Source of the DNA: Saccostrea echinata
Lineage: Eukaryota
Assembly: GCF_033153115.1 (NCBI RefSeq)
Contig: NW_026889779.1
Span: 23,126,001 to 23,190,000 of the forward strand
Reading direction: 5' to 3'
DNA: 64,000 nucleotides
Of the stretch, positions 43,179 to 57,807 are shown piece by piece (within the stretch, counting starts at the first letter, position 1; each line of letters opens with the position of its first letter). The notes below the pieces were generated by a model. The model was not told the DNA's origin, did not search any database, and saw nothing but the letters and a program-made list of their open reading frames with translations. Both the position numbers and the translations under genes were made by a program.

Positions 43179-46100
43179 ATGACTGACAAAAATAAAGATT
43201 ATGAATACGTGTATCCTGAGATAGAGGATCCATTTGTCAGTGTGGAGACCTGCAGAAAAACGGACAAAACCGAACCACAGATATTACAAAGTCTGATCTC
43301 CCAGGAGAATGGTTAGTTATGGAAAAAACTATCAGTAGCAATATTCTTCAATATTAGTCAACAAGTAACAAGCTAGAGAATTAAAATATTAATAAAACAA
43401 TTAATTTTAAAAAATTCTTTATCAGTAAAATCCGTAAATTGGGAGAAAAATAGGTATGTATGCATAGGACCATTTTCATAAAAATCATAATCTTATAATA
43501 GATTCATTTACACATTGACATAATATTTTATGCCTCACTCTTTTATATACAATAATATTTAATATGGAAACAAAATGTTAATTAGTACTGATTGACTGAT
43601 CACCGGTAGCTTATTGTACATGTAGTACAGTAGAAGAATAACAAACAAGGCAGTACCTAACGGAATTTGTAGATCACTATGTCCTGTGTGTTATCAAAGT
43701 TGGTAATTTACATATACATTAAAGCTATATATGGCGTATCTGAGCTAAAAAAATACGAGATTGAGTGTAGATGAACATGATATTTGTTATTTACGTTCAA
43801 ATTAATTTTTTTTTACCCCGCGTTTTAATAGTTAAATTGACTTTAAACTGTGTCTGATATCTAAATGCGGAGTCGGTAAATAAATCGGTCATTGTTTTAA
43901 ATTTCTAATATCTATGAAACGCGATTGATTTAAATTGTGTAATTTACAGGAAAGTCCTATCTTTATATAAAGTAATAAAACAAATAGAACTAATCTTTTT
44001 AATTTTAGTTAGTCTGAACTTATCAAAAATACGCCACATATGACTTTAATTATTCCCTTCAGAAGATAATTTAACTAGTTTTCTAGTAGTATTATTTGGA
44101 TTGGAATATTTTATAAACATTTATTACATACTTAGTAATAAATACAGGATTTTTGCATATGTGATATGCCTGACGTCACAATAGCCACTGTACTACATGT
44201 ACAATAGCAGGGCTGATATGGATCTGCAGGGCTGATACGGATCAATATCACACCCCTGGTAAATTAAACCTCAAAAAACAGTACTTGTGCAGGGCTCTAA
44301 TTGTCGACTAATTTCGTCGCCATGGTGCCTAAAAATTATGATTGGCGCCTAAATATTTTCTATAAGTCGCCAAATTGGCGACCATTTTGAATTTACTTGG
44401 TGTTCGTCAAATTACTGACCTTTAAACATTTTCAATTTTTATTTTATAAAGAGCAGAAAAAAATTCAAAAAGTTAGCAAAGGACATATCTCTATATATTG
44501 ACTAATATCAGTTTTAAAATTGATGCCTAAGAAAAATTAGCATTGGCGACTAATTTATTTTGATTAGGGGCCAGTTGGCGCCTAAATTCTAGAAGTCACA
44601 TATAGAGGCCTGTTGTGGTGACACACATACCGATATTTTTTTTTTTTTTTTTTTGGAACACATTCTTTCTGTTCTTTAATACAATAAGCCATGTGCCTGT
44701 TAGAAGTCAGTGCATGATTATTTAATTGTTTTTTTTCTCAAATTGATGTGTGCTGTATTTTATTACTAAGTATGTAATAAACATAATAAAACATGCCCTT
44801 GTCCACATCACATCCTGTATCAGCCCTCGACCAACATCAGCCCTGAGGCCTTCGGCCCTCTGGCTGATATTGGTGTCTCGGGCTGATACAGGATGTGATA
44901 TGGAAAAGGGTATGTTTTACTCTCTCTATATATAGTGTTATCACGTATTCCCACCCTTGTTTATGCAAAGGTACACAGTTAATAGATATAAATCAGTTGA
45001 TTTTGTACTGATACAATACATTATACTTAGTTTAGTCAAAGGTAAGAAAATTTCGAAAATTGCAAAATGTGAAGCCTAACAGAAGAAATTGAGTTAATTA
45101 CAGATCATTTTGATGATCCTTACATTTCTAGAATAAAATAAATGCATGAACATGAAGGGGACATCATTCGTAGAATCAATTGGAATTTAAACAAGCTTTG
45201 TTCACTAAGAAACTTTGTTGTTCAGCAAGTTTCACCCAATTTGCAGAGATGCTGTCATATGCGGTTAATCAAGACCTTACGATAATGCATGCATATATAA
45301 CGTTTTGATATATATGTCTAAAGTAAAGAATTTTGTTTTGATTTGATTTAAGCTCATAATTATATGTTTTTGGGCAATTTCACATGTAACGAGTTACCAC
45401 TATGCTCTCTTTTCAAAGATGCAGTTGTTAAGATTTTCAAACTTTGTACTGTGATTTAATTTTTCGTATATTTGTATCGATTAGGCATATTAGGCTAATG
45501 CACAAGAATGTTTTTTTTTATATAATCGTTCATCCTACCAAACCAACAAATTTTTTAGGAAACATCAAAGACTTGACTGCCGAAGATTTTATTTCATTTC
45601 TGGAAAATATTCAGGGAACAGTAGAAAAAGATTACCTGAGATGTGCAGAAACACTTTTACTACCAAAACTACAAAAATCCAAAGACATGACATCGCTCTC
45701 AAAGCTGCTTTCCATTGACGAAAGTAAATTTCAGAATTGTGTTTTGAGATCTCTTCAAAAATTATTCATGGAGATGGATCTAAATGAATACTCGGTGGAA
45801 GTCATTCAAGTGTGTCTGAAAAATGTCGCACAACTTTTACAAAAATCACAAGAGGAAGATTCTCTTCAAACAATTATAATGACGCTACAAACAGTACTTA
45901 GAAGTTGTGCAATAGCTGTAATGCTCCATTGCTCCTACAGAAAGGAAAAGAAAACTGTGTTTAACAGCATAACTAAGAGTTTGGAGACAATAGAGAAGAT
46001 GTGGAAGATCGGAATTTCTAGAAGGAAAATAAAAAACGAGGAACCATTAAATTACCAAATGGTTCAGGGGAGTTTGGCTCTCGTGGCGTCTATGGGGAAA

Positions 46101-57600: not shown

Positions 57601-57807
57601 CAACCATTTAGAATTAACATATCTCATTTGGATCTACCATCTCCCCATGTACACAAAGAAAATCCAGTATTCCAAAGTGATGCCTCCTCCTATCCTTGTG
57701 CATATAACACTCCCTCTTGTGGATTAGACTGTGAGTTACAAGTACCAACTAGGGCAAGCACCTGTGAACAAGAGGACTCGTCGGATGATACGGACTATGA
57801 AAACTGA
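43179..57807 (+). CDS. Large protein (~1,260 aa): N-terminal helical region, two tandem degenerate tyrosine-kinase-like (pseudokinase) domains, acidic Tyr-rich tail; 14 exons
   Basis: Exons 43179-43311, 45559-46247, 46339-46492, 46596-47351, 47498-47845, 49659-49723, 49854-49893, 49982(or 49976)-50112, 50514-50666, 50765-50947, 51350-51441, 52333-52480, 56411-56559, 57060-57807. All GT-AG and phase-consistent. Domain 1: IAIR, HVNIVKMF, IIHRDITINS, CSLEMA, IPTRWSAPESL, TDIWMIG, LFTYGCEPY. Domain 2: WLLVDITGKNI, VRIGRM, YWLPKEV, SDVYTMAMLFYE, PDRPPACPEWLYEEVMKPCWDQDRTSR. Confidence 0.82.
44290..44612. mobile_element. TIR MITE
   Basis: Ends CAGGGCTCTA / TAGAGGCCTG, internal tggcg(c/a)c repeats, and TTGTG duplicated on both flanks. 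Confidence 0.6.
44793..44917. repeat. Foldback hairpin with GGCCTTCGGCC apex (likely part of an element spanning ~44125-44930)
   Basis: catcacatcctgtatcagccc…ccaacatcagccctgaggcc-ttc-ggccctctggctgatattgg…gggctgatacaggatgtgatatgg. Extra agggctgata(t/c)gg copies lie at 44209-44241. Confidence 0.75.
52724..52765. repeat. (CA)n microsatellite
   Basis: Interrupted ca dinucleotide run. Confidence 0.9.
52775..54045 (+). mobile_element. Degenerate Penelope-like retroelement, interrupted by a TTAA MITE
   Basis: LLTKILTAVREKLQTYCATTYSRGGVN | insertion | MWILK, DFSRLYTTIPH, DKRDDFN.SIVNFPYL.SNIPLSP, with the 3' module at ~53870-53960. Confidence 0.8.
52881..53217. mobile_element. TTAA-targeting MITE (Kolobok-like)
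   Basis: TIRs GGACATAGGCAACGTA / TACGTTGCGTATGTCC flanked by TTAA at 52877-52880 and 53218-53221. Removing it restores the Penelope GVN.MWIL reading. Confidence 0.8.
54616..55604. mobile_element. TTAA-targeting non-autonomous DNA transposon (Kolobok-like)
   Basis: Perfect 16-bp TIRs GGAGGCTCATTACACC / GGTGTAATGAGCCTCC, with TTAA at 54612-54615 and 55605-55608. Confidence 0.82.
55609..56056. mobile_element. Second TTAA-targeting MITE (Kolobok-like), directly abutting the previous one
   Basis: TIRs AGCTGAACACG / CGTGTTCAGCT, with TTAA at 55605-55608 (shared) and 56057-56060. Confidence 0.78.
56627..56895 (+). mobile_element. tRNA-derived SINE (bivalve conserved-domain type)
   Basis: A box GTGGCGCAGTGG, B box GGTTCGAAT, body ggcacgaaaaagatccttcaatgctcaat…ccgagaacagaccta, and a short (CAA/ATC)-type tail. 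Confidence 0.6.

What the first reader, a model, noticed from the sequence alone, without database searches (positions are those of the whole stretch)
43179..57807. Unclassified tandem double-pseudokinase with an N-terminal helical domain
Seen: an intact 14-exon ORF. Domain 1 has VAIK to IAIR, HRDxxxxN to HRDITINS and DFG to SLE. Domain 2 has HRD to LVD and DFG to RIG, with no recognisable Gly loop or VAIK. Both keep TK-type C-lobes (PTRWSAPE; CW…R). About 300 aa of Leu/Lys/Glu-rich, probably helical sequence precede them, with no obvious signal peptide, SH2 or FERM. Established: JAKs have one active kinase plus a pseudokinase, MLKL couples a helical killer domain to a pseudokinase, and plant tandem kinases act as immune sensors. 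Inference: a catalytically dead sensor, scaffold or executioner. Together with the immune-type promoter, a dead paralogue next door and TE-dense introns, it is a candidate novel invertebrate immune gene family.
Basis: partly seen in the sequence, partly recalled or inferred. Interest (0 to 1): 0.78.

Follow-up and report, generated by a model that had tools for sequence, protein, structure and literature searches.

The report
Oyster double-dead tyrosine-kinase-like scaffold gene
This is a real, expressed oyster gene for a large cytoplasmic protein with a helical front end and two tyrosine-kinase-like domains that have both lost key catalytic residues; it belongs to an unnamed family found in oysters and scallops, and nothing tested here links it to immunity.

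Summary
Window 43179-57807 (+) holds an intact 14-exon CDS (3,795 nt, 1,264 aa, all GT-AG) in Saccostrea echinata. Spliced contigs from two studies join exons 2 to 10. One 1,326-nt contig runs from kinase-like domain 1 into domain 2, so this is one transcript. NCBI splits the locus into two "uncharacterized" genes, LOC133196961 (338 aa) and LOC133196568 (920 aa). Orthologues in S. cucullata, Crassostrea virginica and scallops are single ~1,250-aa proteins.

Domain 1 is tyrosine-kinase-type and reads IAIR, HRDITINS and SLE at the three catalytic positions. Domain 2 is homologous to domain 1 (hhalign 94%). It keeps the catalytic-loop Asp and Asn (LVDITGKN) but has an invariant R-x-G-R in place of DFG.

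The genome holds four intact paralogues and one decayed fragment. dN/dS is 0.24-0.27 for one recent paralogue pair. The ~400-aa N-terminal region matched nothing in Pfam, PDB sequences or the Atlas.

My best reading is a non-catalytic signalling scaffold with tyrosine docking motifs in acidic tails; this is inferred. No test supported the immune sensor or executioner reading. It is an unnamed family and a new variant of the pseudokinase scaffold kind. A coral protein may be a distant relative.

The parts
43179..43311 (+). Exon 1: start codon and an acidic, Tyr-rich N-terminus (DYEYVYPEIEDPFVSVE, 43197-43247)
   Evidence: Peptide is contained in NCBI protein P0001. Donor is GT. The motif is conserved in paralogues and in S. 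cucullata and C. virginica.
45559..46247 (+). Exon 2: N-terminal helical domain (229 aa), with no match in Pfam or PDB
   Evidence: Four copies in the genome at 23-25% identity. The profile found only 13 proteins among 1.84 billion representatives. dN/dS is 0.24 between paralogues 2 and 3. The E2/E3 joint is seen in X1 and X3.
46339..46492 (+). Exon 3: conserved linker between the helical domain and domain 1
   Evidence: Joint 46492->46596 (GT..AG) is seen in X1, X2 and X3. NCBI model P0001 instead reads on into the intron to a stop at 46533.
46596..47351 (+). Exon 4: end of the N-terminal region, then domain 1 N-lobe through the DFG-equivalent. Contains SGGRLF 46859-46876, IAIR 46892-46903, alpha-C NEF 46970-46984, HRDITINS 47216-47239 and SLE 47291-47299.
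   Evidence: PF07714 31.4 bits and PF00069 35.7 bits. ABL1 alignment. Family alignment. Coordinates.
47498..47845 (+). Exon 5: domain 1 C-lobe, tyrosine-kinase type (PTRWSAPE 47518-47541)
   Evidence: PF07714 E 7.4e-12. Closest solved chains are EGFR and Eph receptors, E 8e-11 to 1e-9. The joint to E4 and the joint 47845->49659 are seen in RNA contigs.
49659..49723 (+). Exon 6: inter-domain linker with the conserved LPKISD...KPER(G) motif
   Evidence: Joints seen in X1 and X2. P, E and G of PERG are invariant in 7 of 7 family members.
49854..49893 (+). Exon 7: linker. The NCBI model uses a donor 3 nt further on (49896).
   Evidence: Joint 49891(+2)->49974(+2) is seen in X1 and X2. P0021 has one more residue here.
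49976..50112 (+). Exon 8: start of domain 2, a cryptic N-lobe with no Gly loop or beta-3 Lys
   Evidence: RNA joints. hhalign of domain 2 to domain 1 begins only downstream of this exon.
50514..50666 (+). Exon 9: domain 2 N-lobe (LEVEEEVT 50523-50546; E-E-x-V-T is invariant in the family)
   Evidence: RNA joints. Invariant columns E437, E438, V440 and T441.
50765..50947 (+). Exon 10: domain 2 alpha-E helix and catalytic loop (LVDITGKN 50894-50917)
   Evidence: hhalign aligns WLLVDITGKN with IIHRDITINS. D527 is invariant. Weak PF06293 hit. RNA contig X1 record 4 covers it.
51350..51441 (+). Exon 11: DFG-equivalent RIGR (51362-51373) and activation segment
   Evidence: Peptide is contained in P0021. 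R547, G549 and R550 are invariant in oysters and scallops. The coral relative has RLGR.
52333..52480 (+). Exon 12: domain 2 P+1/APE-equivalent (W-LPKEVI 52334-52351) and alpha-F (SDVYTMAMLFYEFY)
   Evidence: Peptide is contained in P0021. 66-67% identical in all three paralogues.
56411..56559 (+). Exon 13: domain 2 alpha-H/alpha-I, TK signature CPEWLYEEVMKPCWDQDRTSR (56459-56521)
   Evidence: PF07714 positions 214-255, 20.6 bits, below the 23.1 cut-off. Aligns to ABL1 225-264. With the family profile E 6.1e-5.
57060..57807 (+). Exon 14: acidic, Tyr-rich tail and stop. Motif islands are SDEDYAYV 57202-57225, PNYELFS 57472-57492, PNYENET 57547-57567, ENPVFQSD 57658-57681 and DTDYEN 57787-57804.
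   Evidence: 14 Tyr in the 244 aa after the domain 2 envelope, 21% Asp+Glu. The islands are conserved in S. cucullata and C. virginica while the rest of the tail is 45% identical.
62890..63775 (+). Decayed partial copy of exons 8-10 (domain 2 N-lobe and catalytic loop) between this gene and paralogue 2
   Evidence: tblastn with P0019 residues 723-901 gave 36-50% identity, with in-frame stops inside conserved blocks and a frame change.
53420..53960 (.). High-copy interspersed repeat inside intron 12 (not part of the protein)
   Evidence: 11,617 first-look candidates in the genome, 40 of 40 scored at 84-87% identity over nearly the full length. No Pfam family was found on 6 intronic ORFs.

Best explanation
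Shown: window 43179-57807 is one expressed Saccostrea echinata gene that encodes a 1,264-aa protein with no signal peptide. From the N-terminus the protein has a short acidic Tyr-rich segment, then a ~400-aa helical region of unknown fold, then a tyrosine-kinase-derived domain 1. In domain 1 the beta-3 Lys is Arg, the catalytic-loop Asn is missing from its canonical position and the DFG Asp is Ser. A conserved linker (PERG) follows. Domain 2 is a more degenerate kinase-like domain that keeps the catalytic-loop Asp and Asn, has no detectable Gly loop or beta-3 Lys, and carries an invariant Arg-x-Gly-Arg where DFG should be. The protein ends in a ~240-aa acidic, Tyr-rich tail. It belongs to an unnamed family with the same architecture in oysters, pearl oysters and scallops, and that family evolves under purifying selection. 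Inferred: neither domain transfers phosphate. The protein most likely works as a cytoplasmic signalling scaffold. The two dead kinase folds, whose conserved surfaces are the C-lobes and pseudo-active sites, would bind partners, perhaps active tyrosine kinases. The Arg of RxGR would fill the site normally used for Mg-ATP next to the invariant catalytic-loop Asp. The conserved Tyr motifs in the tails (Y-x-N, Y-E-L-F, acidic D-E-D-Y, and N-P-x-F) would act as phosphorylation-dependent docking sites for SH2/PTB adaptors. The helical region would supply localisation or self-association.
For: Gene model: 14 exons, all GT-AG, frame intact. One transcript: contig X1 record 4 (1,326 nt) joins E4-E5-E6-E7-E8-E9-E10. 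The E3/E4 joint is seen in X1, X2 and X3, and the E2/E3 joint in X1 and X3. The four runs come from two studies. All four genomic paralogues keep the same exon order. Orthologues are annotated as single proteins of 1,246 aa (S. cucullata), 1,288 aa (C. virginica) and 1,270 aa (Argopecten irradians). Domain 1 is a TK-type kinase fold: PF07714 above threshold on E4 and E5, 132-147 bits on orthologues, and closest solved chains ABL1, EGFR and Eph. Catalytic residues are not conserved across the family. The beta-3 position is R, K, L, C or F. The catalytic loop reads HRD in oysters and HRN in scallops. No member has Asn at the D+5 position. The DFG column reads SLE, SLQ, NLQ, DLN, KLE or DFS. Domain 2 is homologous to domain 1 (hhalign probability 94.3%, E 1e-7, 221 columns), with LVDITGKN aligned to HRDITINS. 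D527, R547, G549 and R550 are invariant in 7 of 7 aligned members. Invariant columns cluster in the C-lobes (RWS..ESL, D.WM.G, FT.GC.P; SDVY..AM..Y.FY, CP.WL, C...D.T.R) and not in ATP-binding positions. Purifying selection: dN/dS is 0.24 for the helical exon and 0.27 for the domain 1 exon between paralogues 2 and 3. Against a related oyster's transcripts there were 14 synonymous and 18 non-synonymous differences among the 32 listed. Tails: 14 Tyr in 244 aa and 21% acidic residues. Motif islands are conserved from Saccostrea to Crassostrea although the tail overall is 45% identical. Y-[DEL]-[DE]-[IVLF] motifs recur in paralogues, scallops and the coral relative.
Against: No functional datum exists. 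Loss of catalysis is inferred from motifs alone, and some kinases work without a canonical Lys or DFG Asp. Domain 2 keeps both Asp and Asn of the catalytic loop in oysters. S. cucullata orthologues have IAIK, the alpha-C Glu and HRD in domain 1. The docking-motif reading rests on recalled SH2/PTB consensus motifs and not on a test. Only the Saccostrea/Crassostrea clade shares the exact islands; scallop tails differ. The N-terminal fold is unknown: structure prediction was off and there were no Pfam, PDB or Atlas hits. One hydrophobic helix in the N-terminal domain reaches a Kyte-Doolittle mean of 1.7 in this protein and 2.28 in one relative, so a membrane anchor is not fully excluded, although the best 19-residue windows of the C. 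virginica and scallop proteins lie elsewhere and score 1.03 and 1.35. The runs are labelled 'RNA?' by guess. Their RNA nature is inferred from the spliced joints.
Confidence: 0.55

Rival explanations
1. One reading: it is an innate-immune sensor or executioner. The N-terminal helical domain would be a killer or oligomerising module released by the pseudokinases (MLKL-like), or the dead kinases would be decoys for pathogen effectors (like plant tandem kinases).
For: The gene lies in a tandem cluster with birth-and-death dynamics: three intact copies and one dead fragment on contig C30, plus one copy on C9. S. cucullata has several close copies, two of them on one 138-kb contig. Paralogues are very divergent (23-37% identity). 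Identity to the S. cucullata relative used for comparison (P0019, which may not be the one-to-one orthologue) is only about 75-78% in most exons. Eight non-synonymous and one synonymous differences fall in the domain 1 N-lobe against a related oyster's transcripts (small sample). A kB-like/IRF-like run at about 42813-42840 is visible by eye.
Against: There is no strict NF-kB or ISRE site within 1.2 kb upstream of the ATG. The N-terminal profile has no sequence similarity to MLKL or any solved chain. The kinase-like domains are TK-type and not the TKL/RIPK-MLKL type: the top 60 PDB hits are ABL, EGFR, Eph, FGFR and CSK. dN/dS of 0.24-0.27 indicates constraint and not an arms race. The architecture is conserved from oysters to scallops. 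No expression-under-challenge data could be seen: run identities were coded, and none of the six LOC identifiers searched occurs in the paper library's main texts.
Confidence: 0.12
2. At least one domain is an atypical but active kinase. Domain 2 in oysters (catalytic Asp and Asn kept) or domain 1 in relatives with IAIK/E/HRD would work by a non-canonical, metal-independent or displaced-Lys mechanism.
For: LVDITGKN has the canonical D(+5)N spacing and the Asp is invariant. S. cucullata domain 1 has IAIK, NEF and HRD. From recall, precedents exist for activity without a DFG Asp or a canonical Lys (CASK, WNK).
Against: Domain 2's Asn is lost in scallops (RDICCST), and no Gly loop or beta-3 Lys can be aligned in any member. 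An invariant Arg replaces the Mg-binding Asp. The domain 1 beta-3 residue varies freely (R, K, L, C, F), which is not what a catalytic Lys would do.
Confidence: 0.15
3. These are two separate genes, as in NCBI's annotation (LOC133196961 for the helical protein and LOC133196568 for the kinase-like protein), and the 14-exon ORF is a mis-join.
For: NCBI models P0001 (338 aa, ending in intron 3) and P0021 (920 aa, starting at the internal Met at 46670) exist.
Against: Three contigs from two studies splice 46492->46596 across the supposed gene boundary. The frame is continuous. Orthologues and three paralogues carry both parts in the same order, and NCBI itself annotates single ~1,250-aa proteins in S. 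cucullata, C. virginica and A. irradians. No single contig covering E1 to E14 was seen, so a minor short isoform ending in intron 3 is not excluded.
Confidence: 0.04

Closest known systems
Janus kinases (JAK/hopscotch): pseudokinase JH2 followed by active JH1
   Same: Two tyrosine-kinase-type domains in tandem in a cytoplasmic protein with a large N-terminal non-kinase region. A fly JAK was the best named hit outside the family apart from the coral protein (E 1.1e-21 with the family profile).
   Different: No FERM or SH2 by Pfam. Both domains lack catalytic residues. In the tree JAK JH1 sits with ordinary TKs and outside the domain 2 clade (97/96 support). The family's domain HMMs did not pick up the JAK JH2 at domain E of 0.01 or better.
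PEAK1/PRAG1/PEAK3 pseudokinase scaffolds (features recalled; only the abstract start of a PEAK3 preprint seen in the listing)
   Same: The proposed way of working is similar: a dead kinase fold used as an interaction platform, plus long disordered regions carrying tyrosine docking motifs for SH2 adaptors.
   Different: PEAK proteins have one pseudokinase domain flanked by dimerisation helices. There is no evidence of homology beyond the kinase fold. Here there are two kinase-like domains and a folded N-terminal helical domain.
MLKL (four-helix bundle plus pseudokinase)
   Same: An N-terminal helical region precedes a catalytically dead kinase fold.
   Different: The N-terminal region is ~400 aa and has no sequence similarity to any solved chain. 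The kinase-like domains are TK-type and there are two. No death or immune evidence was found.
Plant tandem kinase proteins (WTK/Pm24/Rpg1 type; abstract starts seen in the listing)
   Same: Tandem kinase-like domains with at least one dead domain and no receptor domain.
   Different: By recall, the plant proteins derive from receptor-like-kinase lineages and usually pair a kinase with a pseudokinase. Here both domains are TK-derived and dead, and a helical domain and Tyr-rich tails are added.
Oculina patagonica (coral) uncharacterized protein LOC144638109 (P0042, 1,460 aa)
   Same: It has two TK-type domains with degraded motifs (HRA with TGM, and HGD with RLGR), a ~530-aa N-terminal region, and an acidic tail with repeated Y-[DE]-[DE]-[IV] motifs. 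The family profile gives E 5.8e-41. Its domain 2 groups with bivalve domain 2 (97/96) and scores higher on the domain 2 HMM than on the domain 1 HMM, the reverse of ordinary TKs.
   Different: Its N-terminal region shows no detectable similarity to the bivalve helical domain (hhalign probability 0.3%). The placement of its domain 1 is only moderately supported, and an unrelated receptor TK intrudes in that clade. Long-branch attraction between degenerate domains is possible.

Membership tests
Protein kinase fold, tyrosine-kinase type (Pfam PF07714) | Match to PF07714 above the gathering score | tested here: met
   Domain 1: E4 31.4 bits and E5 45.6 bits against a cut-off of 23.1. Orthologues score 132.6 and 147.3 bits with 2 stretches. 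Domain 2 alone: E13 scores 20.6 bits, below the cut-off. Its kinase nature rests on hhalign to domain 1 (94.3%).
Catalytically competent protein kinase | Beta-3 Lys (VAIK) | tested here: not met
   Domain 1 has IAIR. The column reads R, K, L, C or F across the family. The equivalence is by pattern, because the HMM alignments start after beta-3. In domain 2 no beta-3 strand could be aligned.
Catalytically competent protein kinase | Catalytic-loop Asp, and Asn five residues later (HRDxxxxN) | tested here: inconclusive
   Domain 1 has HRDITINS: Asp is present, and Asn sits at +4 with Ser at +5. Domain 2 has LVDITGKN: Asp and Asn are both in canonical spacing in oysters, and the Asn is lost in scallops.
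Catalytically competent protein kinase | Mg-binding Asp of DFG | tested here: not met
   Domain 1 has SLE (Ser). Domain 2 has RIG (Arg, invariant in 7 of 7 aligned members).
JAK family | N-terminal FERM and SH2-like domains | tested here: not met
   Pfam found only kinase families on window exons and on full-length relatives P0005, P0016, P0022 and P0042. The fly JAK P0043 carries precomputed JAK-type accessory families.
JAK family | C-terminal active kinase (JH1), with phylogenetic grouping to JAK domains | tested here: not met
   Domain 2 lacks DFG Asp, the Gly loop and the Lys. JH1 falls outside both family clades in a 26-row tree. JH2 was not in the tree.
MLKL | N-terminal four-helix bundle plus brace | not testable with these tools
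By sequence, no MLKL chain appeared among PDB hits at E up to 10 with the N-terminal profile.
MLKL | Single TKL-group pseudokinase related to RIPK | tested here: not met
   There are two domains. The 60 best solved chains are ABL, EGFR, Eph, FGFR and CSK, all TK group.
The unnamed bivalve helical/tandem-pseudokinase family (defined here) | Helical domain, then domain 1, then PERG linker, then domain 2 with RxGR, in that order in one protein | tested here: met
   Window exons. The same order is seen in 3 paralogues and in P0019, P0022, P0034, P0035, P0016, P0024 and P0038.
Tribbles pseudokinases (the 'SLE' in place of DFG is recalled, not from a call) | Conserved SLE motif | tested here: not met
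   The SLE of this protein is not conserved even within Saccostrea (SLQ, NLQ, DLN, KLE). The closest solved chains are not Tribbles.

The most novel reading that the evidence does not exclude
This may be the bivalve branch of an ancient animal family, older than the cnidarian-bilaterian split, of doubly dead tyrosine-kinase-derived scaffolds. The second domain would be locked by an invariant Arg in place of the DFG Asp, paired with a retained catalytic Asp. The family would be kept in corals and pteriomorph bivalves and lost in vertebrates and ecdysozoans. That would make it a pseudokinase family absent from the standard kinome classifications.
Probability: 0.3. Interest if true: 0.65.

Novelty: new variant of a known kind. 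Interest (0 to 1): 0.5.

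Why it matters
Pseudokinases are established signalling scaffolds, but as far as I recall no human or model-organism family has two tyrosine-kinase-derived domains that are both dead. None turned up in 5 literature searches here. This family pairs such a tandem with an unclassified ~400-aa helical domain and tyrosine-motif tails. 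It has been kept under purifying selection across oysters, pearl oysters and scallops. It gives a natural test case for what a kinase fold does once catalysis is lost, in particular the invariant RxGR next to a retained catalytic Asp. There is also a practical point: RefSeq splits this S. echinata gene in two, and another model in the same family skips the helical exon, so expression studies will misassign reads.

Tried and rejected

N-terminal domain. Pfam gave only sub-threshold hits (mTOR_dom E 0.013 and others). The profile against PDB sequences gave nothing below E 0.05; designed helical repeat proteins and importin-alpha appeared at E 0.05-1 and are not significant. The Atlas gave no usable hit for the C. 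virginica orthologue residues 1-400. Profile comparison of the post-helical region with the helical domain gave no internal repeat (probability 0.75%). No transmembrane segment is conserved.

Coral N-terminus against the bivalve helical profile: no similarity.

Immune promoter: strict NF-kB and ISRE scans found 5 and 4 sites in the whole window (chance expectation 2.0 and 2.2), and none upstream of this gene.

Intronic ORFs: 0 of 6 had a Pfam family.

Literature. There were 0 papers for six LOC identifiers. Nothing on this family appeared under 'pseudokinase'+'oyster' (24 papers, 15 listed), 'tandem pseudokinase' (5 papers), or five phrases for double pseudokinases (8 papers). In the C. gigas kinome paper (PMC4883820; passages read with 'find'), five 'TK-unique' kinases and 28 ambiguous 'oyster-specific' kinases are mentioned but not named. 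Its supplementary tables were closed and may list members of this family.

The Tribbles idea (SLE) was rejected because the motif is not conserved. JAK descent was rejected on domain content and the tree.

Tree: 26 rows were used. Left out were P0005, P0020, P0023, P0036, P0037, P0040, P0041 and P0013 (close copies or partial proteins) and P0027, P0030, P0031 and P0032 (near-duplicates of outgroups). Only 6 outgroup kinases were on hand, so placements are provisional.

As the operators asked, the joined 1,264-aa spliced model was never built, printed, searched or folded. Exons were searched one by one, and database proteins (P0021, P0019, P0005, P0022, P0016 and others) stood in for the full length.

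Full report
WHAT IS THERE. The window comes from Saccostrea echinata, contig C30 at 23,126,001-23,190,000. The organism is known from exact matches to NCBI proteins.

On the + strand, 43179-57807 holds 14 exons. All 13 introns are GT-AG, the reading frame is continuous and there is no internal stop. The CDS is 3,795 nt, which gives 1,264 aa plus a stop.

EXPRESSION AND GENE UNITY. One read-laying run covered window 45400-51100 with four runs from two studies. It returned contigs that skip nine introns precisely at GT..AG sites:
- 46247/46339
- 46492/46596
- 47351/47498
- 47845/49659
- 49723/49854
- 49893/49976
- 50112/50514
- 50666/50765
- and onward from 50948

The runs are labelled 'RNA?' by guess. 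The spliced joints show that they contain processed transcripts.

Contig X1 record 4 (1,326 nt) runs from exon 4 through exon 10, so both kinase-like domains lie on one transcript. The E3/E4 joint is present in X1, X2 and X3.

This matters because NCBI annotates the locus as two genes. LOC133196961 (P0001, 338 aa) covers E1-E3 and then reads into intron 3. LOC133196568 (P0021, 920 aa) starts at an internal Met at 46670 and runs to the true stop.

P0021 also differs at two junctions. At E5/E6 the RNA-supported junction gives ...S-x-CEQE-LPKISD, which matches the orthologues' CEHG-LPKISD better. At E7, P0021 uses a donor 3 nt further on.

E1/E2 and E10-E14 were not covered by reads. They rest on the NCBI models, which contain those exon peptides exactly, and on orthologues.

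Exons were searched separately, and database proteins served as full-length stand-ins.

PARALOGUES AND NEIGHBOURS. Six-frame searches of the whole genome were run with the helical exon and with the domain 1 exon. Each found the same four loci:
- this gene
- a second copy about 11 kb downstream (C30:23.195-23.206 Mb)
- a third copy at C30:23.25 Mb
- a fourth copy on C9

The domain 1 query also gave one weak generic kinase hit. All four loci keep the order E1, helical exon, domain 1 exons, domain 2 exons.

Paralogues 2 and 3 are recent duplicates. Between them dN/dS is 0.24 for the helical exon (16 synonymous and 17 non-synonymous differences) and 0.27 for the domain 1 exon (19 and 21).

Between this gene and paralogue 2, at 62890-63775, lies a fragment that corresponds to exons 8-10 only. 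It has stop codons inside conserved blocks and a frame change.

The introns carry interspersed repeats. The element at 53420-53960 gave 11,617 first-look candidates genome-wide, and 40 of 40 scored copies were 84-87% identical.

DOMAIN 1. Pfam PF07714 matches E4 (31.4 bits) and E5 (45.6 bits). The closest solved chains for the C-lobe exon are EGFR and Eph receptors (E 8e-11 to 1e-9). For the NCBI protein the closest is ABL1 (E 4e-16). For the family profile they are EGFR, ABL1, FGFR, Eph and CSK (E 3e-27 to 1e-21). Domain 1 is therefore a tyrosine-kinase-group fold.

The ABL1 alignment puts the alpha-C Glu on the E of NEF, and HRDLAARN on HRDITINS.

Across the family:
- The beta-3 position reads R here, K in S. 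cucullata, L in C. virginica, C/R/L in the paralogues and F/L in scallops.
- The catalytic loop reads HRD in oysters and HRN in scallops.
- No member has Asn at the D+5 position.
- The DFG column reads SLE, SLQ, NLQ, DLN, KLE or DFS.

What is invariant instead is the P+1/APE region (I..RWS..ESL), alpha-F (D.WM.G) and FT.GC.P.

DOMAIN 2. Sequence searches recognise only its last helices. E13 scores 20.6 bits against PF07714 positions 214-255. It aligns to ABL1 225-264, with E 6.1e-5 for the family profile. A weak Kdo-kinase hit covers the catalytic-loop exon.

Profile-profile comparison of family domain 2 with family domain 1 gives probability 94.3%, E 1e-7 and 221 aligned columns, running from about alpha-C to alpha-I. 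It aligns WLLVDITGKN with IIHRDITINS. Domain 2 therefore keeps the catalytic Asp, which is invariant in the family, and in oysters also the Asn at +5. Scallops have RDICCST at that place.

The DFG position is R-[ILV]-G-R in every member (R547, G549 and R550 invariant). No Gly loop or beta-3 Lys can be aligned.

N-TERMINAL REGION. The part before the domain 1 envelope is about 400 aa: E1-E3 plus the first ~80 aa of E4. The 229-aa helical exon is 47% A/E/L/K/M/Q/R and 5% Pro+Gly.

It matched no Pfam family above threshold and no solved chain below E 0.05. The Atlas gave nothing for the C. virginica orthologue. There are no detectable internal repeats and no conserved transmembrane segment.

An exhaustive HMM search with a six-sequence profile of this exon found only 13 proteins at E of 0.001 or better among 1.84 billion representatives. 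Five of those are at 1e-30 or better. Structure prediction was off, so the fold remains unknown.

FAMILY. The named members are all 'uncharacterized' or carry automatic names:
- S. cucullata LOC134233858 (1,246 aa), LOC134233952, LOC134238534 and LOC134257922, plus fragments
- C. virginica LOC111134623 (1,288 aa) and LOC111134624
- two Magallana gigas entries
- two Pinctada imbricata entries, one fused to an amino-acid permease in its model
- Argopecten irradians (1,270 and 1,025 aa isoforms)
- Mizuhopecten yessoensis 'Tyrosine-protein kinase Fer' (1,641 aa)

. Fragments of unstated origin from Logan, ENA and JGI assemblies also matched. Every named species is a pteriomorph bivalve.

The word-indexed searches cannot prove absence elsewhere.

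Outside the family, the best hit of the family profile is a coral protein, Oculina patagonica LOC144638109 (E 5.8e-41). Next is a fly JAK (1.1e-21).

The coral protein has two TK-type domains with HRA...TGM and HGD...RLGR, and an acidic tail with repeated Y-[DE]-[DE]-[IV] motifs. Its second domain scores 68 bits on the bivalve domain 2 HMM against 39 on the domain 1 HMM. Ordinary TKs score the other way round, for example ABL at 37 against 74.

In a 26-row tree the coral domain 2 joins bivalve domain 2 with 97/96 support. Its domain 1 joins bivalve domain 1 at only 90/86, and an unrelated receptor TK intrudes in that clade. Its N-terminus shows no similarity to the bivalve helical domain. A deep relationship is possible but not shown.

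HOW IT MOST LIKELY WORKS. Shown: the protein has two kinase folds in which the ATP/Mg-binding residues are lost or vary freely, while C-lobe surfaces and a pseudo-active-site pattern are invariant. It is under purifying selection and it is expressed.

Inferred: it is a non-catalytic scaffold.

The tails fit this reading. The last 244 aa have 14 Tyr and 21% Asp+Glu. Overall they are 45% identical to the S. cucullata relative P0019. They contain motif islands conserved as far as Crassostrea: [SD]DEDY.YV, PNY[ED]LFS, P.Y[ED]N.T (a Y-x-N motif), KENP[VI]FQ[ST]D (N-P-x-F), and a C-terminal Y-E-N. The N-terminus has DYEYVYPEIEDPFVSVE.

That these resemble SH2 and PTB ligands is my recollection of the consensus motifs and was not tested.

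THE IMMUNE READING. No test supported it. No strict NF-kB or ISRE site lies upstream. Only a loose kB-like/IRF-like run at about 42813-42840 is visible by eye. An acceptor-like site about 20 nt before the ATG suggests that the promoter may lie further upstream behind an untranslated exon.

Tandem duplication, a dead fragment and fast divergence are compatible with an immune family, but they are not specific to one.

LITERATURE. None of the six LOC identifiers searched occurs in the library. Searches for pseudokinase+oyster, 'tandem pseudokinase' and five phrases for double pseudokinases found nothing on this family.

In the C. gigas kinome paper I read passages that mention five 'TK-unique' and 28 ambiguous kinases without naming them (PMC4883820). 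Its supplements were closed and may include members of this family.

VERDICT. This is an unnamed, conserved bivalve family and a new variant of the pseudokinase-scaffold kind. Interest is moderate.

Noticed in passing
window 43179-46533 and 46670-57807: RefSeq splits this one gene into LOC133196961 (338 aa, reads into intron 3) and LOC133196568 (920 aa, starts at an internal Met). Spliced contigs from two studies bridge the supposed boundary at 46492->46596.
   Followed up: yes
window 62890-63775: Decayed partial copy of exons 8-10 of the family, with in-frame stops and a frame change. It lies between this gene and the next intact paralogue.
   Followed up: yes
L013-L014 (C30:23.25 Mb), NCBI protein P0039 (LOC133196963, 1,298 aa): NCBI's model of paralogue 3 goes from exon 1 straight to the domain 1 exon and skips the helical exon, which is intact in the genome (L013:4882-5565). 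It also carries a ~390-aa N-terminal extension of unknown nature with no Pfam hit.
   Followed up: partly
window 46934-47280 versus 47580-47661: Against the transcripts of a related oyster (run X1), the listed differences are 8 non-synonymous to 1 synonymous in the domain 1 N-lobe and catalytic region, but 0 to 4 in the C-lobe. The sample is small, and 20 further differences were not shown by the tool.
   Followed up: partly
window 49893-49898: Two in-frame donor sites lie 3 nt apart at the end of exon 7 (GTAGTATGT). RNA contigs use the first and the NCBI model uses the second, a one-residue difference.
   Followed up: partly
window 53420-53960: High-copy interspersed repeat in intron 12: 11,617 first-look candidates in the genome, with scored copies 84-87% identical. 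Intronic ORFs there have no Pfam family.
   Followed up: partly
window 42813-42840 and 43150-43160: A run resembling a kB half-site followed by GAAA repeats lies about 350 nt upstream of the ATG. An acceptor-like ttttgtag lies about 20 nt before the ATG, which suggests an untranslated upstream exon and an unknown promoter.
   Followed up: no
protein P0038 (Pinctada imbricata, 1,569 aa): The pearl-oyster family member is modelled as a fusion with an amino-acid permease (PF13520, residues 31-428). This is probably two neighbouring genes merged by the annotation.
   Followed up: no
protein P0042 (Oculina patagonica, 1,460 aa): A coral protein has two degraded TK-type domains, the same RLGR in place of DFG in the second domain, and a tail with five or six Y-[DE]-[DE]-[IV] repeats. 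It may be a distant relative of the bivalve family.
   Followed up: partly
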